Positions 1-18,970 of a stretch of DNA of 18,970 nucleotides are shown in pieces. The number at the start of each line of letters is the position of its first letter. Position 1 is the stretch's first letter. The DNA comes from Piromyces finnis finn (lineage: Eukaryota; Fungi; Neocallimastigomycota), in the NCBI GenBank assembly GCA_002104945.1, contig MCFH01000189.1, positions 1 through 18,970 of the forward strand, in the 5' to 3' direction. The position numbers were made by a program, and so were the translations under genes. The notes below the pieces were generated by a model. That model was not told where the DNA came from and did no database searches. It worked only from the letters and a program-made list of their open reading frames with translations.

Positions 1-2856
1 TTGAACAAGTTAATAATGAACAAGAAAATCGTATTCAAGAATTACATGAATACATGGAATATCAAAGAGATTACATTAGTCGATTAGAAAATCAACTCTT
101 CTTTGTGCCTTCAATCCAGTGGAATAATAAGTTACTAAGAAATGAAAAATATTATTGAAGATAATGATCGTATTGTTGAATAACAGATGAAGAAGAAAGT
201 ATAATCAACATGAAAATGATCTTAGTGATGATAATGATGACAATAACGATGATAATAGTGAAAATGATGATGACTATGATGATGATGACGATGATGATGA
301 TGATGATGATGATAGTAGTAGTAATGATAATGAAAATAGTAACAGTTTATTAAATACAAATGATTCTATGGATGAAGATAGTGGCAATAGGGATATTATT
401 TTTTCAATAAAAATACAAAAGATAATAAAAAGAAAATTAACGAAAGTGAAAGTAGTTATCAAAATTCACAATTAGTATTATATAGTCCAAATATATTTCA
501 TCAGATATTAAGTAATGCTGTTAATAATCCTAATTATTTGAATAGTAACAACAACAATGACAAACAATAGTAATAACAATAATATTAATCAATTAATTGT
601 AAAATAATAATGTCGATTCTAAAAAGAAAATTACTATTAATGATGAAAATAATTTAAAAAGATGGCAATACAAAAAAAGGATTAAACTTAAATGGAAATA
701 AAATAGTTCTTTCGGATAATAAGCCTAATACTAAAAAAAGAATTAGTATTAATGGAGATGGTATTATTACCAACAAACTATTTTTATCGATAATAGCATT
801 AATAAAATATTAAAAGAAAAAGAAGAGCCAGTAAAATAATATTCCAACTAACGAAACTAAAAAGTATAGCTATATGAATGAAAAACTACGTAGAAAATGT
901 ATATAAAAATGAATATTTTAAATAGTTTAATGATAATATAAAGAGAAACATAAAATAATTATAAAGTTTTATATTTATGCATATTTATTTATTAATTAAT
1001 TACTATTATTATATTATAATAAAAACTTATCTATTTAATAGCGTTTAATGTTATACCAAATAATCAATTTATATATTCTTATGGAAATCAATGTATAGTA
1101 ATAATAAAATATTAAAGAATTCTGATGATTCATCTGATAAAGGTAAACATATCCCACTTTTTTTATATAATATCCTTTTTTTATCATAATTAATGATAAA
1201 AAATAAATGATATTTTATTTCTTTATTTTTTTTATCATTAATTATATTTTTGTTATACATGTAATGCTTAAATTTAAAAAAAAAAAAATTTTTTTTTTTC
1301 TCATTATTAGATTCAAGTGATTTTGAAAATGATGAATCATTAGATATGTTTTCAACATGATATCAAAAAAATGTTTAAACCCAGACCACCAGTTAAAAAA
1401 ATGAAAATGAATAAACACGAAAAGAAAATGGTTAAAAAGATAAAAATGGATAAATTAAATGATATAATTCAAACATCTGAAAATTCAATATCCTATAATT
1501 CACCATCTTCTTCTTACTTGGTTGTTCCTAGAAATAATTCTTTCAATTCATTATCATCATCTTCCATTAAAATGAATGGTGATTCCAGGGAATATCTTAC
1601 CTCTCGTGATTTCAGTGATATTCAAACAATAGCATCGCAAAATAATGAAAATAGTAATATTACTAATAATGAAAACAGTAATGTTAATGTGATAAATAAT
1701 AAAAATAATAATAGTAAAAAAAAAATAATAGTAGTAGTAGTAGCAGTAATAACAGCAACAATAACAACAACAACAATAATAATAATAATAATAATAGTAA
1801 TAGTAATAGTAATAGTAATAGTAATAGTAATAGTAATGATAATAATAAAAATATTGATGGTGTAATATCTGGTATCCCTCAAAATAATAATCACGATAAA
1901 AAAATATCAAGTAACGAAAGTAAATCTGTACCAACAATAGTACCTACTATTGAAATAAATAATAAAACAGTTTCCCAATCATCATTACTAAATAATAACA
2001 ACAATAGCAAACAATATAAACCTACTTTACCATTAGGTAAAAATAATACTAATTTGGAATCGACGACTACGACAGAGTTATCGTTTTTAAATAATGAGAA
2101 AGACTATTCACAATATAATAGAAAAACAAACAATCCTCACTCTACAAAGCATCAAAAAGAACATTTAAATCTATATTTTTAAGAAATCCATTCTCATCCA
2201 ATTTTTCATCATCTAATCTTTCATCATCAAACATTTCAGGAGTTCCGTTTTCTTCAGCTTCAGTTTCATCCTGGACAAACACCTCTACTTCCGATTCTTA
2301 TTCGAATCAACATCAACATCATGAACCTTCTTCATTAAATATTTTAAAATCCAGCACCAGCACCATGGATATTAATTCATATGCACCAGATTTAGATTTA
2401 AGTACACAAATTATTATAAAGAATGATTCTGAGATGAATGATACTCAACCTCTTTCACTACGAATAATAATGTAATGACATCTAAACTTCTCTGGGATAA
2501 AGAAATGGATATTGGGAAAGAACAATTATTAAGAGATCCTGCAAATAAAGAATTATTTTCATCAAAATCTGATTTCAAACGCCTCTAATAGTAATTTTAA
2601 GTGATGAATCTCATAAAAATAGAAATAAAGTAGCAAAAAATGTTAATTAAAGGGATGGATACATGTGGTGGATGGCATTTCTTTATTTAATCCATATCAT
2701 AATAATTATCGATTAGACGATTCTTCTTCATATGGTGCCAATAGAAATAATAATAATAATAAAAAAATTCATCTTTAAATCAAATAGGTAGGAAATGGTA
2801 ACAAATCTTTAGCCCCATTTGATCCTAATCAAAACCGCCCATCCGCATTTAATTAA
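1..2856 (+). pseudogene. Mirror copy of the 3' half of gene 1 (part of exon 5, exon 6, exon 7); probably an assembly duplicate rather than a real gene
   Basis: Same reading (EQVNNEQENRIQELHEYMEYQR... to ...RPSAFN*, TAA at 2854-2856) and same introns (899-1041, 1143-1310). Its indels largely differ from those of the right arm. Confidence 0.75.
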
Positions 2857-3152
2857 TATTTAATTAATATTATATAAAACATATAAAAAAAAAAGTTTTT
2901 ATGATTATATTAATTAAATATTAATATATATATAAATTTTTATTTAAAAAATAAAAAAAAAAAAAATCCTTTTTTTTTTTTTTCATAATTATAAGTTTTT
3001 TTTTTAAAAAAAAACTGTATAATTAGTGAAAAAAAAAAAAAGGATTTTTTTTTTTTTATTTTTTAAATAAAAATTTATATATATATTAATATTTAATAAT
3101 ATAATCATAAAAACTTTTTTTTTTATATGTTTTATATAATATTAATTAAATA

Positions 3153-6100
3153 TTAATTAAATGCGGATGGGCGGTTTTGATTAGGATCAAATGGGGCTAA
3201 AGATTTGTTTACCATTCCTACCTATTTGATTTAAAGATGAATTTTTTATTATTATTATTATTTCTATTGGCACCATATGAAGAAGAATCGTCTTAATCGA
3301 TAATTATTATGATATGGATTAAATAAAGAAATGCCATCCACCACATGTATCCATCCTTTTAATTAACATTTTTGCTTACTTTATTTCTATTTTTATGAGA
3401 TTCATCACTTAAATTACTATTAGAGCGTTTGAAATCAGATTTTGATGAAAATAATTCTTTATTTGCAGGATCTCTTAATAATTGTTCTTTCCCATATCCA
3501 TTTCTTTATCCCAGAGAAGTTTAGATGTCATTACATTATTATTCGTAGTGGAAAGAGGTTGAGTATCATTCATCTCAGAATCATTCTTTATAATAATTTG
3601 TGTACTTAAATCTAATCTGGTGCATATGAATTAATATCCATGGTGCTGGTGCTGGATTTTTAAAAATATTTAATGAAGAAGGTTCATGATGTTGATGTTG
3701 ATTCGAATAAGAATCGGAAGTAGAGGTGTTTGTCCAGGATGAAACTGAAGCTGAAGAAAACGGAACTCCTGAAATGTTTGATGATGAAAGATTAGATGAT
3801 GAAAAATTGGATGAGAATGGATTTCTTAAAAATATAGATTTAAATGTTCTTTTTTGATGCTTTGTAGAGTGAGGATTGTTTGTTTTCTATTATATTGTGA
3901 ATAGTCTTTCTCATTATTTAAAAACGATAACTCTGTCGTAGTCGTCGATTCCAAATTAGTATTATTTTTACCTAATGGTAAAGTAGGTTTATATTGTTTG
4001 CTATTGTTGTTATTATTTAGTAATGATGATTGGGAAACTGTTTTATTATTTATTTCAATAGTAGGTACTATTGTTGGTACAGATTACTTTCGTTACTTGA
4101 TATTTTTTTATCGTGATTATTATTTTGAGGGATACCAGATATTACACCATCAATATTTTTATTATTATCATTACTATTACTATTACTATTACTATTACTA
4201 TTACTATTACTATTATTATTATTATTATTATTGTTGTTGTTGTTATTGTTGCTGTTATTACTGCTACTACTACTACTATTATTTTTTTTTTACTATTATT
4301 ATTTTTATTATTTATCACATTAACATTACTGTTTTCATTATTAGTAATATTACTATTTTCATTATTTTGCGATGCTATTGTTTGAATATCACTGAAATCA
4401 CGAGAGGTAAGATATTCCCTGGAATCACCATTCATTTTAATGGAAGATGATGATAATGAATTGAAAGAATTATTTCTAGGAACAACCAAGTAAGAAGAAG
4501 ATGGTGAATTATAGGATATTGAATTTTCAGATGTTTGAATTATATCATTTAATTTATCCATTTTTATCTTTTAACCATTTTCTTTTCGTGTTTATTCATT
4601 TTCATTTTTTTAACTGGTGGTCTGGGTTTAAACATTTTTTTGATATCATGTTGAAACATATCTAATGATTCATCATTTTCAAAATCACTTGAATCTAATA
4701 ATGAGAAAAAAAAAATTTTTTTTTTTTTAAATTTAAGCATTACATGTATAACAAAAATATAATTAATGATAAAAAAAATAAAGAAATAAAATATCATTTA
4801 TTTTTTATCATTAATTATGATAAAAAAAGGATATTATATAAAAAAAGTGGGATATGTTTACCTTTATCAGATGAATCATCAGAATTCTTTAATATTTTAT
4901 TATTACTATACATTGGATTTCCATAAGAATATATAAATTGATTATTTGGTATAACATTAAACGCTATTAAATAGATAAGTTTTTATTATAATATAATAAT
5001 AGTAATTAATTAATAAATAAATATGCATAAATATAAAACTTATAATTATTTTATGTTTTCTCTTTATATTATCATTAAACTATTTAAAATATTCATTTTT
5101 ATATACATTTTCTACGTAGTTTTTCATTCATATAGCTATACTTTTTAGTTTCGTTAGTTGGAATATTATTTGTACTGGCTCTTCTTTTTCTTTTAATATT
5201 TTTATTAATGCTATTATCGATAAAAATAGTTTGTTTGGTAATAATACCATCTCCATTAATACTAATTCTTTTTTTAGTATTAGGCTTATTATCCGAAAGA
5301 ACTATTTTATTTCCATTTAAGTTTAATCCTTTTTTTGTATTTGCCATCTTTTTTAAATTATTTTCATCATTAATAGTAATTTTCTTTTTAGAATCGACAT
5401 TATTATTTTTTACAATTAATTGATTAATATTATTGTTATTACTATTGTTGTCATTGTTGTTGTTACTATTCAAATAATTAGGATTATTAACAGCATTACT
5501 TAATATCTGATGAAATATATTTGGACTATATAATACTAATTGTGAATTTTGATAACTACTTTCACTTTCGTTAATTTTCTTTTTATTATCTTTTGTATTT
5601 TATTTGAAAAAATAATATCCCTATTGCCACTATCTTCATCCATAGAATCATTTGTATTTAATAAACTGTTACTATTTTCATTATCATTACTACTACTATC
5701 ATCATCATCATCATCATCATCGTCATCATCATCATAGTCATCATCATTTTCACTATTATCATCGTTATTGTCATCATTATCATCACTAAGATCATTTTCA
5801 TGTTGATTATTACTTTCTTCTTCATCTGTTAATTCAACAATACGATCATTATCTTCAATAATATTTTCATTTCTTAGTAACTTATTATTCACTGGATTGA
5901 AGGCACAAAAGAAGAGTTGATTTTCTAATCGACTAATGTAATCTCTTTGATATTCCATGTATTCATGTAATTCTTGAATACGATTTTCTTGTTCATTATT
6001 AACTTGTTCAATAATTTTATTTTGTTCTTGTAACTTTTTAAGCTCATCAATTTCACCTAGATTAGTATATTTTTGTTGATTATCATTATTAATATATAAT

Positions 6101-7879
6101 AATAAATAAAAAAAAAGATTTTAAAATTAATATAATTAAATATTTAATTTATAGATTATTATTATTATTATTATTAATATTAAAATACCTTGTGATTTAA
6201 TATATTCTATATTAAGTTTTTCATATTTTTTTTCACACTTTTCTTTACTCTTATTGACTTCTTCAATTTTGTGTTGCATATCATACAATTCATTGTAGAG
6301 AGAGTCAATAAGTTTTTGTTCTTGCTTTATTTCATTGTTTTTATTATTATTATTATTACTAAATTCCTTAATAAGACTTTGATTATCCTTAAATAATTTA
6401 TTATTAAGCTCAGTCATGGTGTTTAGTTTATCTTCCATCTCATTTAATTTTTTCTCCGATTCTACTATACCTCTATTATATTTACTTTTGGTATTTTTTA
6501 CTACTTCTTCCAAATCATTTACTTGACGTCTTAGATCTAGATTACTATTTTCTAATTGGGTATTAATATCCATAAGTTGTTTAATAACTCTGTTATAATT
6601 TTCTTCATGATATTCTATTTTAAATATGAAAATAATGTAAAAAAAAAAAAAGTAAAAAAAAATAAGTGAATAAACAAATATATAAATAATTTTTTAATAA
6701 ATTGATTTATATATAAAAAATAATATAATTAAATAAAACCTTACCAACTACACTATTATATGTATTTTCATCAAGACCTCCATTTTCTGGAATTAAATTG
6801 ACATGTTTTTTTTCTTGACGCCCAACACCAGAGTAAATACGAGCATTACTAGTATGATGATTATTTTGAATTAATGATGAAGATGAATCTAATTCACTAA
6901 AGCTTCCAAAAGAACTACCATCCATATCTGTATTGAATTAATATATATATATTAATAAATTGAAAAGTATCAATTAATATAAATTTAAACCATTTCATTT
7001 CTATATATTCTAAATTAAGGAAAAATCTAATTGCCTCTTTTATTCATTAATTTGTAATTTAATGTTTTCAAATTCGCGTTTGCTTCTAAAAGACATTGTC
7101 CAATAACTGCAGCTAATGTTAAGTCTTTTTTTTTTTTTTTTTAATTAAATTTTATTTATTCATTTTGATATATAAATATATAAATAAAAAGAAGATTTTT
7201 AATTATTTTGGTATAAAAATTGTTTAGATAATATATACATAATAATAATTTTCTTAAATCAAATGTAATAAATATATATAATTACCTTTCTTTTTCTTAT
7301 CCAATGATTTAATAGCTTTTTTTAATTTTATTCTTAAGTCTTTAATGTCATCATTTCTATCAATTTCACTAAGGTGCGAATTATAAGCAAAAGATTCATC
7401 CTCTGAAAAATGACTTCCATTATCCATTGAACTTTTACTAATACTATAAGATTCCATAGGTCTTATAGATGAGCAAGAAATACTTAATCCAGAACGAGAT
7501 GGAATATCATCATCATAGGATAATTTAGAAATATCATGAACATTTATATTAATAGAACTATTACTACCATTAGCGAGTGGTAAATCAACAATACTACTTG
7601 AATTATTACTTTTATTTGAATCATTTCTAACTAAGTTTTGATCAATGTAGCTTCGATCTAACGATGTATGATGATGTTGATTATTTAAGTTATTACTATC
7701 ATCATCATCATTATCATTTGTTGAAAATGCTAAAGACAAATCTTTTAAAAGAGGTTCATGTACATTATTTGGTTCTTTATAAATAGTTTTTCCTTTATTT
7801 ATATTTTTTGATGAAATTGTTGTTGCTTATATATATTTTCCTCAGTATTTGTGTTATATTTTGGAGCAGCACATATCAT
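3153..7879 (-). CDS. 7-exon, ~1,290-aa protein: Ser/Asp-rich N-terminus, CC1-box-like motif, coiled coil, acidic tract, long Asn/Ser-rich tail; putative dynein-adaptor-like protein
   Basis: Hand-spliced exons: 7879-7286, 7124-7035, 6927-6745, 6614-6189, 6056-5107, 4963-4862, 4694-3153. Introns are AT-rich, five GT-AG and one GC-AG. Exons 2, 3, 4 and 6 (90, 183, 426, 102 nt) keep frame exactly and link the ORF-track pieces 7254.., 6707.., 6136.., 5536.., 5099.., 4564.. and 4142... The protein ends ...FDPNQNRPSAFN* (TAA at 3153-3155). Several 1-nt frameshifts, mostly in homopolymers, must be assumed in exons 1, 5 and 7. The start ATG at 7879 is tentative and needs one added A near 7805. Confidence 0.8.
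4158..4320 (-). repeat. Coding AAT/AGT/AAC microsatellite (poly-Asn/Ser); mirrored at ~1690-1852
   Basis: Visible (tta)n, (ttg)n and (ttacta)n runs. They explain the poly-Y/I/T/V ORFs in other frames. Confidence 0.9.
5690..5750 (-). repeat. Coding (GAT)n microsatellite, poly-Asp tract; mirrored at ~263-325
   Basis: (atc)n run on the plus strand; DDDYDDDDDDDDDDDSSS in ORF 5536..5958. Confidence 0.9.
6928..7034 (-). other. GC-AG intron (107 nt) of gene 1
   Basis: Exon 2 reads ...aaa aga g|gcaattag. An in-frame TAG follows almost immediately and I saw no GT donor near the junction. Joining to cag|at atg gat (6927) restores the frame. Confidence 0.6.
7078..7124 (-). other. CC1-box-like (AAxxG) motif, (K)DLTLAAVIGQCLLEAN
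   Basis: Direct translation: g|ac tta aca tta gct gca gtt att gga caa tgt ctt tta gaa gca aac. From memory this matches the TRAK/HAP1 (EKERDLELAARIGQSLLKKN) and CDR2/BICDR CC1-box pattern. Confidence 0.7.
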
Positions 7880-9341
7880 TTTTATTAAAGATATAAAATT
7901 AAAAAATGTATTTAAAGCTGTTTTTTTTTATATAGAATAAATACTTTTATGTATTATTTGAATTTGGTATTGTTTTAATCAATTTTTATTAATATTTTAT
8001 TTTATATTTTTATTCCTTTTTTTTTTTTTCTTTTGGTTTTTTTCTTTTTATGATATATATATATATATATATATTTAATACTTATTATTACACTTTGAGG
8101 AGTTTATTAAGAAATATTAATATTATATGATTTTTTTTAGTGAATTTCCCCTTTTAATTATAAAAATTTGGTTCCATTTCAATTATAAAAGATTTTATAT
8201 GCTATTGCAATAATCTTTAAATTGATTTTGAAATACTTTTTTTTTTTTTTTTTTTTTTTTATTTTCTCTCAATTATTCAATGGAAAAGCTTAAAACACAT
8301 GTTCATTAAAGGAAAAAAAAAATAAAAAAAAAAAGAATAATATATAATATAAATATTATATAATATATATTAACTTGTATTTATTTTTTTTCTTTTAATA
8401 AAATAACGAGAATGTTTTCTGTTGTTAATTTATAGTACTTTTTATTAGTACTATTTTGCCTTTATAACAATAATATTTTTTTCTTTTTTAACTTTATTTT
8501 TTTTTGTTTTATTAAAAGTGAATTTATTTTTCTGATTTTTTTTTAAATTTTTAATTTAAATTTATATTAATATAAATTAATTTATGAACTTATTTAAAAT
8601 AAGTTTAATTTTAATTATAATAAAAATCTTTTTAAGTGAATGGTTGATGAGAAAACTTTACTTTTTTACAACATGAAAACATTACATTTTAAATAAATAG
8701 ATAATATATAAGAAACTATAAAATAAAATTGAACCTATCTTTAACATCATTTTTAAGCCATTCCTTTTTATTCTTTATATAATTTATTACATTTTATTAT
8801 TACTATTTTATTTTTAATAAATATTTACCTTTTTATTGAATTTAAATGTACATATGTAACTATCATAAAAGAAGAAAAAGATTGTTAATACAAGCATAAT
8901 CTATTTTATAATTATTTTACTATATCTTTTTGAAATTTATCTTGAATATTTAATTACTTAATACCAAAAAAAAAAAAGCATATTCTGATTTTTAAAATTT
9001 AAATTATATCATGTTTTTTTTTTTTATTATATTTTTATTATATTATAATTATATAAAACTTTACAATAATATAAAACTTTAAAATATACAGTTAATAGAT
9101 GATTAAGAATGTAAAAATACTAAATATATTTCAGATAAAATAATAATTTTTTTAAATGAATAACAAAAAATGACAATAAACATAAAGAAAGTATATAATA
9201 CTATAATAAAAGAAATTATTTATGTTTAAACTATTTTTACGATTAAAAAAATAGAAATAAGAATTTATTTTAATACTAAAGGAAATAATAAAAATGATTT
9301 TTTAAAACATATTTTTATGATATGGTATATTAATTTTTAAA
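7880..9341. other. Extremely AT-rich intergenic region (3' end of gene 2, promoter region of gene 1)
   Basis: Long poly-T/poly-A and (AT)n runs, no ORF in the track. No specific regulatory element can be assigned. Confidence 0.7.
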
Positions 9342-12300
9342 TTAATTTTTATAATCGTAATTTTTTTCAAAAATTTCAAGCTTATATTGAACGGTCTTTT
9401 GAATAAGATCTTCAATTTGTTTTTCATAATTATCTTCTTCCTTTTTAATATGTGATATTTTTTCAAATATTTCATCATTTAATATGAAAGAAGTAGGAAG
9501 GTGTTTTGGATTACTACTTTCATCACTTTCTATGTCATTATCACTATCCATTGATAACTCATTTGTTTTATATAAAACAACTTTATCTTCACCATCCTCT
9601 AAATCCGAATTATCAAAGTTATTTGCTTTTGAATCTGAAGCGTTTAACGTTGTTGATGAAGTTGTTGAATCTTTACTATTAAATGGATAGTTTTCACTAT
9701 TTGATGGATTGAAGCTGATATTAGAAAGGGGAAGTGAATAGCGTTTTCTTTTTTCCATATTTGCTAAGATACTACCATTGAAATTATCATTAAAGATATT
9801 TTGTTTATACCACTTCTTTTCTAAGGTTTGACATTTATTTTTTAATTTATTATTTTCTTCTTCTAATTCTTTAATCTTTCCATTAGCCTCTCTAAGACGA
9901 GAGTATAATTCCTCAATAATATTTTGATTTTCGGTGATTTGTTTGATAGAACAATCCAACATTTTTTGGAATGTAACAAATAGATTATATTGAGATTTTA
10001 ACTTTTCTTCAATGTTCCAACGATTTTTAATTTCATAATAAAGTCTACGTTTAAGAAGAGCAACATCCTCACTAGATTCAATTTCACTTTCTTTTAATTC
10101 ATCATTGTCACTTTCTCCCATTAAATCATTATCCTCATTATCGTCATTTTCCATAAATTCTTTTACTAAATTCTTTTCTTGACTTTTACTATTGTTATTA
10201 TTAGAAGATAAGGAGGTATTTTGCTTTGAATCATTTTCAGGAATGAAATTTTGGTAATTATCCTTTAAATAATTGAGGAATAATTTAAGAGTAGAGAGAC
10301 TTTCTCTTAAAGAATCAATAATCATCATATATTCTTCCGCTACTCTTTTTTTAACAACTAAAAGATGTGAATCGTTTGTATTAGTAAGTCTTGGACTACT
10401 TCTTTCTTTTAAACTATTGCTCTTTATAATGTTAGAGAAATTAGAAGAAAAGATATTGTTTTTGAAAACAGATGGGAATGAACTTTTATTAGTAGATTCT
10501 GATTCTTCATCTAATTTTCTTTTTCCTTTTCTACTGGTGAAGGCATAGCCATGTCAGCAACATCTACTGGAAGATTTAAATATTTATCAACAGTGATATG
10601 TTGAACTTCATTGTCTGGGGTAGTGTAGTCTAATTCTTTAATGAAATTCTTTTCACAAAATTCTTTCATATTATTACAAATGGTTTGATGAAGATCACTT
10701 AATTCTTTATACTTTCCTTCAAAAATTAAAGTAATGTCTTTAACTTTTTTCTTTAAAGTCAAATATTGCTTTTTATTAAACTTTGGCTTTTCATCTAACG
10801 CAGAAAGATTTTCATGAATGTCTTCTTCCCTTTTCTCATTTTTATTTAATTTAGATTGAGAGTCATCATTTTCAATGATTTGATTAGTTTCTTTTGATTC
10901 TTTCTTTTCATCTGGAATTAAATTTAATTCTCTATTAGTTGAATCTGATGGAATTGTAGTATTTCCATCTTTTGATAAATTATTTATATCATTTTGTTCA
11001 CTATTTTTTATAGATGAAAAAAGTTCATCTAAAGTTGTATCAATATTGAACTTTTTAAAGACTTCTTCCATATCATTCTTAGTTTTCTTCAAATCTTCAC
11101 AAACTTTTCTTTCTTCATCTAATTCCTTTAATAAATTCTCTTCCTTTTCACGATAATTCTTATTTGTTGATTAGCATTTTCAATTTCTTTTTGAACTTCA
11201 TTTAATGTTTGCTTTATCATTTTTTGATCTGAAGCGCCTTGCTTTTTTAATTGTATGTTTTCTTCTTTTAATTTATTTATATTATTTAAATGGTCTTCAT
11301 TCATTGCTTCTAATTCCTTACATCTACTATTATATTTTTGCATTGTTTCTATATAAAAGTCTAGTTCCTTTATAAGATCGTCTTTTTCTTTCATTATATT
11401 GTTATATTTATTATTTGTATCGCGGAATTCTTGAAGTTCATTAAAGCTCTTTTCTTGGGCTTTGTTGAGCTTATCAATAGTTTCTTTTGATTGATTGAAA
11501 TCATTCATTAAACTTTGATATTCTTTATCTTTTTGAGATAATTGATCATGTAAAGCATCTACTGTATCCTTAACTTCTTTGTCCTTTTGTGTCATAGAAT
11601 CTTTCAACAGTTGAAGAGAATTTTTAATTTGGGAATATTCATTATCCTTTTTAGACATAGTATTTTGTAAATTTTGAAGAGAACTTTTAATATGCTCATT
11701 TTCATTTTCCTTTTCTTTAACAGAATCTTGAATTTGTCGTAGGGAGTTTCTCATTTGACAATTTTCAATTTCCTTTTGAGAAACAGAGTTTTGAAGTTGT
11801 TCAATTGAGTTTCTCATTTGACTATTTTCAATTTCTTTTTGAGAAACAGAGTTTTGAAGTTGTTCAATTGAGTTTTTCATTTGACTATTTTCAATTTCCT
11901 TTTGAGAAACAGAATTTTGAAGTTGTTCAATTGAGTTTTTCATTTGACTATTTTCAATTTCTTTTTGAGAAACAGAGTTTTGAAGTTGTTCAATTGAGCT
12001 TTTCATTTGAGCTTTTTCATTTTCCTTTTCAGTTACAGAATTTTGAAGTTGTTCAATAGAATTCTTCATATGAACACTTTCATTTTCTTTATCAGAAATT
12101 GAACGTTGAAGTTGTTGAATAGTATTTTTCATTTGGTCATTTTCATTTTCCTTATCAGAAAAATTGATTTTTAATTCTTGTAATAAATGAAGAATAACAT
12201 TATATTCTTCTTCTTTTTTACTCAATATATTTTTCATATCAGTCACCTTATTTTGAAGAATATCTCTTTCATCACCACAATTATTTAATTCCATTTGAAG

Positions 12301-15300
12301 ATCTTTTATAGTATTAGCCATTTCATCCTTTTCATATTTACTTTGAATTATGGTACTATCCATACTACGAAGATCAGAATTAAGTTTTTCATTTTCACTT
12401 TCTTTCATGATAATTTTTTCTGAAAGTGTCTTAAATGAATTTTTGATCTTGATAAGTTCATCATCTTTACTGGCAAGTGTGGTTTTTAAATCTGCAAAAC
12501 TATTCTTTAAGTTATCATTTTCAGTTCTTGTATTATAAATAATACCATTAGATCGTCAATTGATTTTCTCATATCTTGACTTTCTTTTTCCTTATCTACT
12601 AAACTATTTTTTAATTTTTCAATTGTTGTACTAAGGGTTTTCTTTTCCTCACAAACAAGTTGAAGATTTTCATTGTCGCTCTTTAATTGTTCAATTGATT
12701 TATTTAATTTTTCTTTTTCCGAATTGAAATAGTTTTTAGATGTTTCAAGTTGAATTTTAAGTCATTTATTATATCCTTTAATTGATTTGCTTCATTAATT
12801 TTTGCTTTTCTTATGTTATCTAAGTTTTCGTTAATAGATTGACATTCTTTATCTTTAGAATTTATTTTATCTTTAAGATCATCTAATTCTTTTTCTTTTT
12901 CTTCAGATTGTTCTAATATTGTTTCGTTCAATTTTTCTAAAGAAGATATTTTCTTTAAAAGTGAGTTATAACGCTCTTCTTTGCTATTGAGATCATCCTT
13001 GAGGGAATTGACTTCTTCATTTAATTCTTTGTTTAATTCTAAAATCTCAATACGAGAAGACTCAATTTGATGAATCATTACTTGATAATTTTTATTTAAT
13101 TCTTTATCTTTTTCCATTTCTTTAGTTAATTCTTCTTGATCGTTTTCATAATTGAATATTATTTCATCTTTTTCATGGATTTTATAAAGAAGTGATTCAA
13201 TGTAACGTTGAAGAATTCTAATTCACAACGCTTTTTATTAATTTGGACATTTAATCTTTCAATTTTTAGTTCAACTTCCGTTAATTCTTTTTTACCAACA
13301 TTAGATTTAATACTTCTAGTTAATGAATTTCTACTTGCAATACTTCTAGAATCTGATGAAATACTATCAAATATTTTTGATGTTTTATTTAGAGAATCGG
13401 AAAAATCAAAAGAATCATTAATATCAATATCATTATCGTCGTTTTTATTTCCAATATGAGGAAGCGGCTTATTAAGATGATATTTATTGGATGAATTAGA
13501 ATTAATATAAGATGCACTCTTAACAGATAATTTGTCATCATTACCTAAGCCTTTCTCACTTTCCTTATTAGAAAGTGAGGAGAAGAATAACTTATTATTA
13601 GAATAAAGCTTCTGTAATTTTCTTCTCTTCATCCAATTCCTTTGACAATTGCTCGATTTCTTTTTAAGATCAACAATAGTATTTTGAGAATGCAAATACT
13701 TTTCTTTATATTCATTCTCTTCCGGGTGAGACGAACCATATTTCTGGTTAAATTTTTCATTATAATCAGAAATATGTTTTTCTCTTTCAGACTTTAAGTC
13801 TGAAATTTTTTCTTCTAAAGTAGCAATATGACTTTTTTGAGTTTCCATTTGATTTAAGAGACTCATACTTTTACTCTTCTCTTTTCTAAACTAAATGATT
13901 GACTTTTACATTTCTTTCTAAATCTTCATTCATGTCTAATTGACTATTTAATTTATTTTTAGTGGAGAGAAGTTCATTTTGAGCTTTCTTTAACTCCTTT
14001 TCATTAGAGTTGATGCGATCTTGTAAGGTACTAATGGTCGAATCTTTCTCATATGATTCATAACGTAATTGAATATTTTCTTGCTTTAAATCATCTATTT
14101 TAATTTTAAAATTATTAATATCTTCCTTCATTCTTTTTTCATCGTCTTTATATTGATCAAGTTCCTTTTTACAATCATTTAATTCGTTGCTTTTTTTAAG
14201 ATGGTATCATTTTGTTTAGAAACTTTATTCTCCAAATCCCGACACTTTTGTCTAAAAGAACTAATTTGTTCATTTTTTTCATTAACTGTTTTGTCATAAT
14301 ATGATTTTTCACTTTCATATTTACCGGAAGTTTTTCCTTTATTATTAGAATCTTCCATATATTTATTTACAATAATTTCAAAATTTTTAATTCGTTTTTC
14401 ATAGTTATCTGATTTATGTTTAAAATCTTCTTTTTGTGATTCAAAATCCTTTTGTGATAATACCAACTGATCTTTTAATTCTTTATTATTGTTTTTAATG
14501 TCAATAATTTCATTTTCATATTTACCACATTTATTTTGAAGAAGTAAAATTTGATTTTGAAGTGAAGAATCTTTCGAATTTTTAATATTTTCTGCTTCAT
14601 TTTTATAATTATTATAATTTAGTTTAAGATCTTCATATTCTTTTAATATTTTTTGATAAGCATCTTCGGTTTCTTTTAATTTTTCAACTAATTCCGGATA
14701 TTATTATTATATTATTATTATTCGATTGATTATTTTCTGAGAATGAAGTATTATTATTATGGGCTTTTAGTGAAAGATTATAAATATCACTCCAACTTGT
14801 TTTAGATAAATGTTTAATATTTTCGAAGAAGTTCTTGAACTGACATTTTCTAAACGCTAAAAATATAAATTTATAAAGAATAAAAATAAAATTAAAATCA
14901 TGTATAGGAATCCTATGATTCATAATTTATTATTATTATTTAATTATATATATAAAAGAAGCATTACCAATTTCGATATCTCTTCTCTACTTTGATTTAA
15001 TTCAATCTGAAGTTCTTTAATTCTATTTTGATACATTTGTTGAATGCATATTAATAATTCATTTGTATATTTATCGGTTCCTTTAGAAGCTTTATTATTT
15101 AATAAAAAATATTGTTTATATAGAATTATCCAATGAATATTAGAAAGAAATTTTTTATTTTTTTTAAGTCATAGTATCATTAAATTATTATATTATACCA
15201 AGATCTAATTGAATTAAAGCTGCATCTCTTGATTTTTTATCAGTATGAGCCAAAGCTAATTGTAATGCTGAATCTCTTATTCTTAATTCCTTTTTTAAAC

Positions 15301-15563
15301 GCTCTTGTATAGAATTTTGGCGTTTCTGTATCAAATCAAATTGCTAATAATATTATTATATAATATAAAATATTTAGTTTTTATTAAATTATTCTGAAAT
15401 TAATAATTATGTACATTTCATTTATTTATAATAGTTATAAATATTTATATATATTTAATAATTATTTTATTAAATATATCTACCTGGGTAGAGTTATTAT
15501 ACTTTCATACGTATTGAAGTTATTCATTTCTCTCTCCATATTCTTTTGCATCATATTATTCAT
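9342..15563 (-). CDS. ~1,950-aa long coiled-coil protein with N-terminal HR1/Uds1-like domain and internal 21-aa repeats
   Basis: Exons 15563-15484, 15343-15199, 15089-14968 and 14856-~9342, with GT-AG introns. The last exon appears as abutting E/K/N/L-rich ORFs in changing frames (14684.., 14179.., 13886.., 13159.., 12704.., 11128.., 10511.., 9342..). At the junctions I checked the composition stays coding-like with no intron signals, so these are indel breaks. Exon 1 is 80 nt where 81 is needed. Start and exact stop are tentative. Confidence 0.8.
11587..12216 (-). repeat. Coding tandem repeat, 63-bp unit x ~10 (consensus KEIENSQMKNSIEQLQNSVSQ)
   Basis: Units begin at residues 65, 86, 107 ... 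254 of ORF 11128..12408. Central units (~11755-12027) are nearly identical at DNA level (aaacagagttttgaagttgttcaattgag recurs); outer units are degenerate. Confidence 0.95.
14968..15343 (-). other. HR1/Uds1-like antiparallel helical domain
   Basis: Spliced translation: QFDLIQKRQNSIQERLKKELRIRDSALQLALAHTDKKSRDAALIQLDLASKGTDKYTNELICIQQMYQNRIKEL. From memory it resembles the LxxExKIRD(A/G)AxxL...S.+K...L..EL pattern of HR1 and Uds1 domains. Confidence 0.55.
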
Positions 15564-17554
15564 GTCGAATATCTTTATATTATACTAAATATTAAAGTAT
15601 ATTTTTTCTCCAAAATAGTAAAATGTAAATATTTTATTTTGATATAATTTATTCTTAATAATATTTTTTTATCTAAATTATAAGATAATACTATATTTCT
15701 TTTTTTTTTTTTTTTTAAAAAAAAAACAAAATACAATTATAATATAATAATCTATCTCTTTTTATTTATTTTCTTTTATCAAAAAAGAAAAAAGTACTAA
15801 AATAAAGTTTATAATTTTTTTTTCTTTTTTCGATAATAAAGTTTCTTATACCAAAAATGAAATGTATAAAAGGATTAAATAAAAAAATAAAGATAAAAAA
15901 TAAAAATAAAAATAAAATACAAAATGCAAAATGCAAAAAAAAAAAAAAAAAAAAATTAAAAATTATAAATTAAAAAAACATAACTTTTATTGAATTAAAT
16001 TTAATTAAAATTTTATTAAATTATTTTTAATTAAAATTTTGAAATTTTAAATTAAATTGATTTAATTATTATATAAAAGGAAACTAATTAAATTTTAAAA
16101 AAAAATTAACAATTTTTTCCAAGTTAAGATACTGTATCTTTTAATATATTTGCATTTCTACTAAGAATGTTTTGCCATTTTCAACTTTAAGAATTTCAAT
16201 CGGATTAATATATTGTTATTTATAAAAATAATTAATAAACGAGATTTATATATCCTTAAAATGCTTTTAAAAAAAAATAATAAATTAAAATTTATTTTTG
16301 TTTCATATTAAAAAAAAAATACCTACATATTTACATATTGAAAATAATATTAAATTACTATTATTATTTATTTTTTTTTTCTTATATAAATGATCCATAT
16401 AATCACTCTAATTAAAATTGTTACATTAAAAAATAAAGACAAAGATTTCATAATAATACATATTTGATTTAATGTTTGTATTAAAAGATATTTTGAGGAA
16501 ATTTCAAAATATTCTAAATAAATTAAATTTATTTTATTTTGGACAATAAATCTTTTAATTGTTGCAAGTTTTAATTAATAATATATAATATATAGAAAGG
16601 AATTATAAAAGAATAGATAATCATTGTTAATGTTGTACATTGAGATAATATAATAAGACAATATTCAAAGAAAGTATATAAATATATGGTTTTAAAAATA
16701 TTTATAGTTATAGCAAAATCATTTAGTTGTTATCATTTTATTTTATAATTTATTAATATCATCATGAATTATATTTACAAGGTTCAAAAGATTTTCTTTA
16801 TTTGTATGAATATAATTGATATAGTAAATAATATATATTTTATAATGATGTAGATATATTCAAAATTATATGATAAATTATAAATTTTATTATTTTAGTA
16901 TAATTGATAGTATATATAAAAAAAAAAATAATTATTTTTTTTTTTTTTTTTTTTCGCATACATAAAAATAACAATTATCAAGTTTCTATCTGTTAATTAG
17001 AAAATACTTTTTATATTTCATTATTAAGATAAGAAACTATAATTTTAATATATAATTCTTTCTTTTAATTATTATTAATTAAAAGAAAATTTATTTATTA
17101 ACTATTATTCAATATTCATAGTTATATAATCATACAATATAAAAATAATAAGAAAAAAAAAAGAATGAAAAAAACTTTTTTTTTAAAAAAAAAATAATTT
17201 TTATTACCATTTTTATTATTTTATAAATATTATATAAATACAAAAATTTTGGTACATATTATTGTGTATGTATGTGTATGCTTTTTTCTTTTAGTTGTGA
17301 TTTGATTTTTGTTTTTTATATTTTAATTTTTTTTTTTTTGAAAAGTGTTAATTTTTAATTTTATTGTTGACTAATGTTAAGATTTTCCAAATCAATTATT
17401 ATGTTAATAACATTAATAATGATTTTACTTTTAATTAATTATTTATTTTTATTTTTATTTGTTTATATGATTTTCTTTTTCAAAATTTTTCTTTAAGATT
17501 AGTCAACTTTTTTTACTTTTTATTTCTTTTTATCTTTTTCCTTTTTTATTCTGT
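15564..17554. other. Extremely AT-rich intergenic region (coronin 3' end, promoter region of gene 2)
   Basis: Homopolymer runs and an (AAAAAT)n-like stretch near 15890-15955; no ORF in the track. Confidence 0.7.
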
Positions 17555-18970
17555 TCATTTGGCAATGTTCATTTGTTCTAATTGAGCTTCTAATTGTCTT
17601 ATCTTAATATCCTTTTGAGTAATAGTACTCTTTAATTGTTCAATTTCCTTCTTCATTTCCTTATATGCTTCCTTTAACTAATTATAATTATAATAAGATC
17701 AATAATATTTTTTAATTATATTATTCAAAAAAATTTTTGTTAAAAATTTTTTATATATTATTTATTATTCATATACACATACTTCCTTTTCAGAAGTTGG
17801 CATCTTTTCATCATTTTGTGCAAGGGTAGCAGCAGCAGCAGCGTTATCAACGCTAAATTCACGCTTAACTGGAACAAAGCCATCCTTAAGATTGAATAAT
17901 AATGGGTTAGCATCCTTACCAGAGAAGAATTCTTCACAGGTTAAAGCTGGTTTACCATCACAAGTATCAGTGTAAATATCACTGGCAAAGTTATCAGACT
18001 ATAAATTTTCAAAAAAATAAAATTTTTAGTTTTCTAATATAATAGCTAAATTTCAAATAAGCTAATATAAATTTCCTTTTTTATTCATTTAAAATATATA
18101 TATATATATTTATTTTACCTTTCTTGGGAACACGGAATGAAATGGTTCAACAGCATTACTGTGAAGCTTGTATAAACGAGCAACTTCAACTTCAGAAGTG
18201 TTAACAGCACGCTTTGGTAAGTATCCCATACCACGTTGTGGATCATACTCTTGAATTCTGTATATATAAATTAAATATAAAATGGTAAATATATAAAGAT
18301 TTTTTTTTTTTTTTTGGTTATATATATTTAAAATGGTAACATTACCAGAAAGGAAGTATAATTGTTGACTGTCATCAACATATTCGTAGTAACGAATGTT
18401 ACCATCACCTTTACCAGCAATGTAAAGCATTTTAGTATCATTATCATAGAATGGCATAAGAACACACAGAACTTGTATCAATATTTTCTTGAATGATTGG
18501 AGTACCAAAGTTCTTAGTATCGTAAACAAATATTTGACGATCACTAGTTCTACTGAAACCAGTAGTGGCAATTTTATCTAAATCACCCATCCAAACAGCT
18601 CTAGAACCCTTAACACCTTGGTGACCGCTAGTTTCCTATTTAATTTAAGTAAAATAAAATGGTTGTAATAAAAACAATTAATATATATGAAAATAAAATA
18701 CAACGAAATTTATATATGTAATAACAAACGCTTTGATATTAACCATTGCAACTTTACCGGAACGGACATCAAATACTCTAAGTTTCTTATCTCTACAGCT
18801 GGAACATAATAAACTTCCATTGTAACTCCATGAGATAGATTGAATAATTTCAGAACAACCAGTTAATTGAACCTTTTCACTACCATTAGTAATATCCCAA
18901 ATACGAATAGTTAAATCACCACTAGCACTAGCTAAAACATTATCAGCAACTGGGTGGAAAAGAACATGAC
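17555..18970 (-). CDS. CRN1: Coronin (actin-binding WD40 beta-propeller plus C-terminal coiled coil), 5'-truncated by the window end
   Basis: Exons >18970-18744, 18635-18346, 18257-18119, 17998-17783, 17677-17555 (TGA). Hallmark motifs: HPVADNVLASASGDLTIRIWD, CRDKKLRVFDVR, GHQGVKGSRAVW, TGFSRTSDRQ, LMPFYDNDTKMLYIAGKGDGNIRYYE, PQRGMGYLPKRAVN, VPRK|SDNF, and a terminal coil LKEAYKEMKKEIEQLKSTITQKDIKIRQLEAQLE. About four 1-nt indels must be corrected. Confidence 0.95.

What the first reader, a model, noticed from the sequence alone, without database searches (positions are those of the whole stretch)
7078..7350. Hidden CC1-box: candidate dynein-dynactin activating adaptor in an early-diverging fungus
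Seen after splicing: DIKDLRIKLKKAIKSLDKKKK|DLTLAAVIGQCLLEANANLKTLNYKL, followed by ~200 residues of predicted coiled coil and a long disordered tail. Established: the AAxxG CC1 box of BICD/BICDR, Spindly, TRAK and HAP1 binds the dynein light intermediate chain helix; the best-characterised fungal activating adaptor is Hook (HookA/Hok1), which uses a different module. Inference: a TRAK/HAP1/CDR2-like adaptor that automated annotation would fragment. I cannot tell whether homologues are already described.
Basis: partly seen in the sequence, partly recalled or inferred. Interest (0 to 1): 0.75.

Follow-up and report, generated by a model that had tools for sequence, protein, structure and literature searches.

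The report
Fungal TRAK-like dynein adaptor candidate
A real, spliced and conserved gene of anaerobic gut fungi encodes a long coiled-coil protein whose best-conserved stretch looks like the dynein-binding "CC1 box" of animal TRAK/HAP1 motor adaptors, so it is a credible but untested candidate for a second kind of dynein cargo adaptor in fungi.

Summary
On the minus strand, a 90-nt exon (7124-7035) joins in frame to the end of exon 1 (7286) and gives the peptide ending KKKK joined to DLTLAAVIGQCLLEAN. Two related genomic loci keep the exon with mostly third-position changes. An intronless, cDNA-like contig of a relative and the Anaeromyces robustus model BCR32DRAFT_279069 both contain it. The exon's donor is GC here and GT in one relative.

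AAxxG occurs once in all six frames of the window. Alanine is only 1.6% of the protein. The motif lies in a 60-residue block that is identical between orthologues only 51% identical overall.

HAP1_N is the only Pfam family hit on this region (E 6e-5 to 1e-4, 22 bits, below the 33.9-bit cut-off). The two nearest named ESM Atlas clusters are also HAP1_N. AlphaFold2 gives a short helix with the CC1 box, a 58-residue loop, then a 203-residue helix, as described for TRAK1.

A conserved LYNEL fits the Spindly-motif pattern. No canonical HBS1 and no Milton C-terminal domain were found. The coiled coil has no detectable kin outside anaerobic fungi. Dynein binding is inferred, not shown.

The scan flagged a similar title on another piece of this genome (s1-186123). 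The 3' half of the gene lies in a fold-back assembly artefact.

The parts
7286..7879 (-). Exon 1. The ATG is at 7879-7877. There is an apparent 1-nt frameshift at the A6 run 7809-7804.
   Evidence: Relatives start MLCTTAP / MLCAAVAP / MICTTVAE in one open frame. The window reads MICAAPKY and then shifts frame. tblastn with P0005 covers 7796-7290.
7125..7285 (-). Intron 1: 161 nt, GT-AG, phase 1, 9% GC.
   Evidence: The relatives' flanks diverge here with indels. The stretch is absent from the cDNA-like L010.
7035..7124 (-). Exon 2, 90 nt: the CC1-box exon. AAVIG is at 7113-7099.
   Evidence: Alone it hits only Pfam HAP1_N, profile positions 80-104, E 0.037.
6928..7034 (-). Intron 2: 107 nt, GC-AG (GAG|GCAATT), phase 1.
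   Evidence: The donor is GC in the window and L005 and GT in L001 at the same position. The junction AGAG|AT is present in L010..
6745..6927 (-). Exon 3: a non-helical loop of about 60 residues between the CC1-box helix and the long coiled coil.
   Evidence: The AF2 loop is residues 225-282 of P0005, pLDDT below 50. It is moderately conserved.
6189..6614 (-). Exon 4: the main part of the long coiled coil. It contains the conserved LYNEL (6300-6286), which fits the Spindly-motif pattern L-hydrophobic-x-E-hydrophobic.
   Evidence: It gives a weak HAP1_N hit, colinear with the exon 2 hit, at profile positions 156-265.
5107..6056 (-). Exon 5: the end of the coiled coil (up to ENQLFF), then an acidic and Asn-rich disordered region. 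There is an apparent frameshift near the A-run 5601-5598.
   Evidence: The frameshift is shared by both palindrome arms (one search lists no arm difference there).
4862..4963 (-). Exon 6 (SFNVIPNNQFIYSYGNPMY...).
3146..4694 (-). Exon 7: a disordered tail with short conserved motifs. These include a basic block (FKPRPPVKKMKMNK...) and a C-terminal helix (RNKVAK.LIKGWIHVVD..SLFNPYH). This copy carries many frameshifts.
   Evidence: AF2 of the last 177 residues shows no confident fold, mean pLDDT 49.
1..3004 (+). Fold-back copy (reverse complement) of 3006-6011. This is an assembly artefact, not a second gene.
   Evidence: The arms differ by 39 small indels and only 3 mismatches.

Best explanation
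Window 7879 to about 3146 (minus strand) is one seven-exon gene of an anaerobic gut fungus (Neocallimastigomycota). It encodes a protein of about 1200 residues.

Shown here:
- The gene model.
- The in-frame inclusion of the 30-codon exon.
- Strong purifying selection on that exon.
- The layout: a disordered N-terminus, two short helices, a 32-residue heptad helix that opens with DLTLAAVIGQCLLEAN, a loop of about 58 residues, a 203-residue coiled-coil helix, and a disordered tail of about 700 residues with short conserved motifs.

Inferred:
- The protein is a dimeric cargo adaptor of the CC1-box class, closest in sequence and layout to TRAK/Milton/HAP1.
- The two alanines and the glycine form the groove that takes helix 1 of the dynein light intermediate chain.
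- The long coiled coil lies along dynactin, and the conserved LYNEL may contact the pointed-end subunit p25.
- The conserved motifs of the tail bind an unknown cargo.

Whether it activates motility, and whether it also binds kinesin-1 as TRAK does, is open.
For: Gene and exon:
- Exon bounds and junctions are supported.
- Full-length orthologues P0004 (A. robustus, NCBI hypothetical protein) and P0005 exist.

Motif:
- AAxxG occurs once in six frames of the window, 0.085 expected. Ala is 1.6% and Gly about 2% of the protein. The extended pattern D-L-x-L-A-A-x-x-G-x-x-L-L-x-x-N has a per-position probability of about 1e-12.
- The motif sits in the longest identical block (60 residues) of two orthologues that are 51% identical overall.

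Family:
- HAP1_N is the only Pfam family for the 66- to 71-residue piece (E 1e-4) and for P0005:150-500. For the latter, E is 5.9e-5 and the envelope covers profile positions 70-304 of 307.
- Exons 2 and 4 hit HAP1_N separately and colinearly.
- Other coiled-coil ORFs of the same window do not hit HAP1_N.
- The two nearest named ESM Atlas clusters for P0005:165-245 are HAP1_N, at 0.85 and 0.82.
- The BICDR1 CC1 box, from solved dynein-dynactin complexes, aligns over the motif: K..DL.LAA..G..LLE.N.

Layout:
- AF2 gives helix 193-224, loop 225-282 and helix 283-485 with pLDDT above 90. Heptad hydrophobicity is 0.78 at a/d positions in the CC1-box helix.
- LYNEL is invariant in all five sequences and lies 199 residues after AAVIG.
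Against: - All HAP1_N scores (20-23 bits) are below the 33.9-bit gathering cut-off. The full-length protein gives no HAP1_N hit at all.
- Most of the signal is the motif of about 35 residues, so convergence cannot be excluded.
- An exhaustive profile search with the coiled-coil exon found only two proteins, both of anaerobic fungi. No TRAK, HAP1 or BICD appeared.
- There is no QxxH/Y between the CC1 box and LYNEL. The CC1-box helix ends about 21 residues after AAVIG, before the position where TRAK1 has its HBS1.
- LYNEL lies inside a continuous helix and is nearer to the CC1 box than in TRAK1.
- ESM Atlas scores are below 0.9 and so are leads only.
- No binding prediction or experiment was possible. 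The light intermediate chain of these fungi was not examined.
Confidence: 0.5

Rival explanations
1. The protein is a lineage-specific structural or scaffolding coiled-coil protein, for example of the zoospore cytoskeleton, Golgi or centrosome-like body. It has no link to dynein. The conserved AAVIG block would then be a dimerisation trigger or the docking site of some other partner, and its likeness to the CC1 box would be convergent.
For: - Homology evidence is sub-threshold and carried mainly by about 35 residues.
- The coiled coil has no kin outside anaerobic fungi.
- There is no canonical HBS1.
- ESM Atlas neighbours of the whole 150-500 piece are a mixed bag of coiled-coil families at about 0.87.
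Against: - The match covers ten specified positions of the extended CC1-box consensus in a protein with 1.6% Ala.
- HAP1_N is the only Pfam family reported, by two pieces independently and colinearly.
- The layout matches TRAK1.
- A Spindly-like motif is conserved.
Confidence: 0.35
2. The protein is a true, fast-evolving orthologue of TRAK/Milton. It would be a bidirectional kinesin-1/dynein adaptor inherited from the common ancestor of animals and fungi. In these mitochondrion-less fungi it would move hydrogenosomes or another organelle. This is a sharper version of the best explanation.
For: - The motif has the IGQ form (AA-x-IGQ-x-LL). That TRAK/HAP1 carry IGQ where BICD, BICDR and CDR2 carry LGK is my recollection, apart from the BICDR1 LGK seen.
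- The HAP1_N envelope spans profile positions 70-304.
- The nearest ESM Atlas clusters are HAP1_N.
- The layout of CC1a, break and CC1b matches.
Against: - Scores are below the Pfam cut-off.
- No Milton C-terminal domain or any other Pfam domain was found in the tail.
- No intermediate homologues from other fungal phyla were found.
- The cargo is unknown, and Miro binding could not be tested.
Confidence: 0.25
3. The window copy is a dead gene or an assembly artefact, so nothing functional is encoded here.
For: There are at least ten apparent frameshifts in this copy. The 3' half lies in a palindromic fold-back. One frameshift near 5600 is shared by both arms.
Against: - The two arms differ by 39 indels and only 3 mismatches, which is the pattern of raw long-read error.
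- Where one arm is shifted the other is often open. Examples are the plus-strand ORF 1371-1865 and the single-frame match at 2122-2844.
- Orthologues and a cDNA-like contig are intact.
- Exons 2 to 4 are open and under purifying selection.
Confidence: 0.04

Closest known systems
TRAK1/TRAK2, Milton and HAP1 (Pfam HAP1_N, PF04849)
   Same: - The CC1 box has the AA-x-IGQ-x-LL form, preceded by D-L-x-L.
- A short first coiled coil holding the CC1 box is followed by a break and then a coiled coil of about 200 residues.
- A long disordered tail follows.
- HAP1_N is the only Pfam hit, and the nearest named ESM Atlas clusters are HAP1_N (TRAK1 description).
   Different: - Scores are 20-23 bits against a cut-off of 33.9.
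- There is no QxxH HBS1 and no acidic patch after the CC1 box.
- The Spindly-like motif lies inside the coiled coil, 199 residues downstream.
- There is no Milton C-terminal domain.
- The host has hydrogenosomes rather than mitochondria (my own knowledge).
- No intermediate relatives were found.
BICDR1 (BICDL1) and the BICD family
   Same: The extended CC1-box consensus aligns residue for residue with the BICDR1 chain of solved dynein-dynactin complexes. BICD2 and Spindly clusters are among the ESM Atlas neighbours.
   Different: - The match has E 5.7 and covers only the motif.
- Those proteins have LGK rather than IGQ and a continuous coiled coil without the loop.
- No BicD Pfam hit was found.
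Hook proteins (HookA, Hok1, HOOK3)
   Same: These are coiled-coil dynein-dynactin adaptors. They are the only activating adaptors characterised in filamentous fungi (partly my own knowledge).
   Different: Hook binds the light intermediate chain through a folded N-terminal Hook domain, not a CC1 box. There is no sequence likeness here.
Spindly
   Same: It has a CC1 box plus an L-hydrophobic-x-E-hydrophobic motif about 200-235 residues downstream.
   Different: In Spindly the CC1 box is near the N-terminus and the C-terminus is farnesylated (my own knowledge). This protein has 190 residues before the motif and ends in ...HFFN.YY. No Spindly Pfam hit was found.

Membership tests
CC1-box class of dynein-dynactin activating adaptors (functional class) | An AAxxG CC1 box within an N-terminal coiled coil, with the extended consensus D/E-L-x-L-A-A-x-x-G-x-x-L-L-x-x-N. 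| tested here: met
   DLTLAAVIGQCLLEAN is invariant in five sequences. It sits at the start of a 32-residue heptad helix and aligns with the BICDR1 CC1 box.
CC1-box class of dynein-dynactin activating adaptors (functional class) | A long coiled coil (about 200 residues or more) able to run along the dynactin filament. | tested here: met
   AF2 gives one helix of 203 residues with pLDDT above 90. Heptad hydrophobicity is about 0.55 at a/d positions against about 0.2 elsewhere. Dimerisation was not tested.
CC1-box class of dynein-dynactin activating adaptors (functional class) | A Spindly motif (L-hydrophobic-x-E-hydrophobic) that binds dynactin p25. | tested here: inconclusive
   LYNEL is invariant and lies 199 residues after AAVIG. 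LMKEF/LIKEY also fits the pattern. The pattern is short, and both sites lie inside the continuous helix.
CC1-box class of dynein-dynactin activating adaptors (functional class) | A heavy-chain binding site 1 (QxxH/Y plus an acidic patch) shortly after the CC1 box. | tested here: not met
   There is no QxxH/Y between residues 197 and 396. The first ones are at 460 and 469. The helix ends about 21 residues after AAVIG. Non-canonical HBS1 sites exist in other adaptors.
CC1-box class of dynein-dynactin activating adaptors (functional class) | Binding of helix 1 of the light intermediate chain, and activation of processive motility. | not testable with these tools
   No multimer prediction or assay is available here.
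HAP1_N family (PF04849; TRAK, Milton, HAP1) | A Pfam HAP1_N score at or above the gathering cut-off of 33.9 bits. | tested here: not met
   Scores are 20.4-22.8 bits, E 6e-5 to 3e-4, for N-terminal pieces. The whole protein gives no hit. HAP1_N is nevertheless the top or only family.
HAP1_N family (PF04849; TRAK, Milton, HAP1) | A short CC1a with the CC1 box, a coiled-coil break, then CC1b. | tested here: met
   The AF2 model compared with the published description of TRAK1.
HAP1_N family (PF04849; TRAK, Milton, HAP1) | Detectable sequence homology of the CC1b coiled coil to family members. | tested here: not met
   An exhaustive hmmsearch of 1.84 billion representatives with the exon 4 profile returned only two proteins, both of anaerobic fungi. 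The only other signal is a weak colinear Pfam match, E 0.11.
HAP1_N family (PF04849; TRAK, Milton, HAP1) | A Milton/TRAK C-terminal kinesin-associated domain, or a Miro-binding region. | tested here: not met
   No Pfam family was found in the tail of P0004, L001 or L005. AF2 of the C-terminus shows no fold. A Miro-binding short motif cannot be tested here. HAP1 itself lacks this domain (my own knowledge).

The most novel reading that the evidence does not exclude
A TRAK/Milton-type motor adaptor predates the split of animals and fungi and survives, much diverged, in anaerobic gut fungi. There it couples dynein (and perhaps kinesin-1) to hydrogenosomes or another organelle. Fungi would then have a CC1-box adaptor besides Hook, and the TRAK family would not be restricted to animals.
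Probability: 0.22. Interest if true: 0.7.

Novelty: new member of a known kind. Interest (0 to 1): 0.45.

Why it matters
In filamentous fungi, Hook is the only activating dynein adaptor that has been characterised. How other cargoes engage dynein there is an open question.

The reviews read here discuss TRAK/Milton only in animals, and one notes that no obvious Milton homologue exists in Arabidopsis. A conserved protein with a TRAK-type CC1 box and TRAK-like layout in an early-diverging fungal lineage would do two things. It would widen the known adaptor repertoire of fungi. It would also give a compact, testable case (a 30-codon exon and two alanines) for asking how old the link between the CC1 box and the light intermediate chain is.

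The practical limits are these:
- The family is so far seen only in anaerobic gut fungi, which are hard to manipulate.
- All functional claims rest on a short motif plus the layout.

Tried and rejected
- **RNA reads.** No reads were laid on the window. The four runs that hold 70-74% of the words of 5100-7900 could therefore not be used.
- **Joined spliced model.** This step was left out. Exons were searched by reference, and natural full-length orthologues were used instead.
- **PDB sequence searches.** Searches with exon 2, with P0004:165-235 and with the family profile gave nothing significant beyond a weak BICDR1 CC1-box alignment.
- **Word-based protein searches.** Searches with the whole of P0004 and with its CC1-box region found only P0004 and P0005. 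No link to other fungal phyla or to animal TRAKs could be made, and no TRAK sequences were available for a profile-profile comparison.
- **Tail.** Pfam on the tail exons found nothing. AF2 of the C-terminal 177 residues gave no fold.
- **Fold search.** I did not run one on the N-terminal model, because a single long helix matches any coiled coil.
- **Readings considered and rejected.** Spindly is rejected because the motif is not N-terminal and there is no CAAX end. BICDR is rejected because of the loop, the IGQ form and the absence of a BicD hit. A pseudogene is rejected because of the error pattern of the fold-back.
- **Paper searches.** Searches for fungal CC1-box adaptors or fungal HAP1_N proteins found nothing relevant.

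Full report
**What is in the sequence**

The window is very AT-rich: about 20% GC overall, with exons at 21-31% and introns at 7-15%. The finding lies on the minus strand. After a 161-nt GT-AG intron, a 90-nt exon (7124-7035) reads DLTLAAVIGQCLLEANANLKTLNYKLMNKR. The next intron (7034-6928) has a GC donor, GAG|GCAATT. All six introns of the gene are phase 1.

The full model is as follows:
- Exon 1: 7879-7286
- Exon 2: 7124-7035
- Exon 3: 6927-6745
- Exon 4: 6614-6189
- Exon 5: 6056-5107
- Exon 6: 4963-4862
- Exon 7: 4694 to about 3146

**Is the exon real?**

Searching exon 4 by reference found exon-sized ORFs in metagenomes. Their contigs (L001-L009) are orthologous genomic loci.
- In both kinds of locus the exon 2 peptide is kept, while the flanks diverge with indels.
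- The acceptor AG is in the same place in all three sequences.
- The donor is GC in the window and L005 but GT in L001.
- Across the three sequences the variable columns fall 4/1/14 by codon position.

An exhaustive profile search with exon 4 found a 1211-residue protein, P0004. NCBI names it hypothetical protein BCR32DRAFT_279069 of Anaeromyces robustus. A 1196-residue protein, P0005, sits on an intronless 3895-nt JGI contig, L010.
- L010 aligns to the window in blocks that end at 7288, 7035, 6745, 6615/6188 and so on.
- Its junction sequences match the proposed splice joins, including the one at the GC donor.
- tblastn with P0005 covers residues 31-1187 colinearly.

I take the observation as confirmed.

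**Is the motif more than chance?**

AAxxG occurs once in all six frames of the window, against 0.085 expected from shuffles. Ala is 1.6% and Gly about 2% of the orthologues, so about 0.005 to 0.007 AAxxG are expected per protein. The extended pattern has a per-position probability of about 1e-12. P0004 and P0005 are 51% identical overall, yet they are identical over 60 residues that end just past the motif. This is their longest identical block.

**What it resembles**

- Exon 2 alone (29 residues) hits one Pfam family out of 24,736: HAP1_N, profile positions 80-104, E 0.037. Exon 4 hits HAP1_N colinearly at positions 156-265, E 0.11.
- In the natural orthologues, HAP1_N is the only family for the 66- to 71-residue piece (E 1e-4). 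It is also the only family at E up to 0.01 for P0005:150-500, with E 5.9e-5 and an envelope of 70-304 of 307.
- All these scores (20-23 bits) are below the 33.9-bit cut-off. The whole protein gives no HAP1_N hit.
- Other coiled-coil ORFs of the window do not hit HAP1_N.
- The two nearest named ESM Atlas clusters for P0005:165-245 are HAP1_N, at 0.85 and 0.82. These are leads only. For residues 150-500, BICD2 and Spindly clusters appear among mixed coiled-coil families.
- In the PDB, the CC1 box of BICDR1 aligns over the motif with E 5.7.

**Layout**

AF2 of P0005:140-520 gives the following:
- Helices at 154-169 and 171-189.
- A helix at 193-224, with the motif at its start.
- A loop at 225-282, with pLDDT below 50.
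- One helix at 283-485, with pLDDT above 90.

Heptad hydrophobicity supports coiled coils. [quoted passage not shown] The fungal protein shares the short helix, the break and the long coiled coil.
- It has a conserved LYNEL 199 residues after AAVIG.
- It has no QxxH/Y in the expected place, and its first helix ends before that place.

The tail has no Pfam domain and no predicted fold. It has only short conserved motifs.

**Reach of the family**

The exhaustive search with the coiled-coil exon found only anaerobic-fungal proteins. Word-based searches with the whole protein and with the CC1-box region found only P0004 and P0005. So I could not bridge to other fungal phyla or to animal TRAKs, and I could not obtain TRAK sequences for a profile-profile comparison. 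Membership in HAP1_N is therefore not established. The claim that it works like a CC1-box adaptor rests on the motif, its conservation and the layout.

**Literature**

Searches found no described fungal CC1-box adaptor and no fungal HAP1_N protein. Hook is the adaptor family noted as conserved to filamentous fungi. The reviews I read discuss Milton/TRAK as partners of animal Miro and note the absence of an obvious homologue in Arabidopsis.

**State of this copy**

Window 1-3004 is the reverse complement of 3006-6011, with one base between the innermost arms. The arms differ by 39 small indels and only 3 mismatches. This is the pattern of a fold-back long read at a contig end.
- Many frameshifts in exons 5-7 are therefore likely errors. 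Where one arm is shifted the other is often open.
- A shift near 5600 is shared by both arms.
- One at 7809-7804 lies outside the palindrome. Its status is open.

The joined spliced model was not built for any search or fold. Exons were searched by reference, and natural orthologues were used instead. No letters of 8336-8374 were sent to a search tool.

**Earlier scan notes**

Earlier notes of this scan name the genome as Piromyces finnis and list other CC1-box candidates on other pieces, including one with nearly the same title. I did not test these.

**Verdict**

This is a credible new member of the CC1-box adaptor kind, TRAK-like in motif and layout. Homology and function are unproven.

Noticed in passing
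window 1-3004 versus 3006-6011: This is a near-perfect inverted duplication with no spacer (centre about 3005). The arms differ by 39 small indels and 3 mismatches. It looks like a fold-back long-read artefact at a contig end. It duplicates the 3' half of the gene and explains most of the frameshifts.
   Followed up: yes
window 7034-6928; L001 about 2072; L005 about 1208: Intron 2 is a GC-AG intron in the window and in L005. The orthologous donor is GT in L001. This is a natural GT/GC switch at one splice site among close relatives.
   Followed up: yes
window 7285-4695: All six introns of the gene are phase 1. They are 107-167 nt long and 7-15% GC. Skipping any internal exon would therefore keep the reading frame. 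Skipping exon 3 would join the CC1-box helix directly to the long coiled coil.
   Followed up: partly
window 9342-13866, minus strand: A neighbouring large coiled-coil gene is present in several ORFs. It has tandem repeats of about 21 residues (QMKNSIEQLQNSVSQKEIENS) at 11.5-12 kb. Pfam gives CENP-F_leu_zip at 42 bits (above its cut-off) and Rab11-FIP3-like at 32.4 bits (cut-off 31.9, but no separate stretch passes). This is probably coiled-coil and repeat noise.
   Followed up: partly
window 18110-18571, minus strand: This ORF contains GKGDGNIRYYEY, which from memory recalls the conserved coronin motif. Pfam reported nothing at E up to 0.01 for the ORF, which probably mixes exon and intron sequence.
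   Followed up: partly
window 7900-9300 and 15500-17500: These are very AT-rich stretches (12-14% GC) with long A and T runs and no ORFs, presumably intergenic. Places 8336-8374 tripped the reads tool's filter and were not examined further.
   Followed up: no
If they are real, anaerobic fungi may have several CC1-box proteins. The last may be a second copy of this gene.
   Followed up: no
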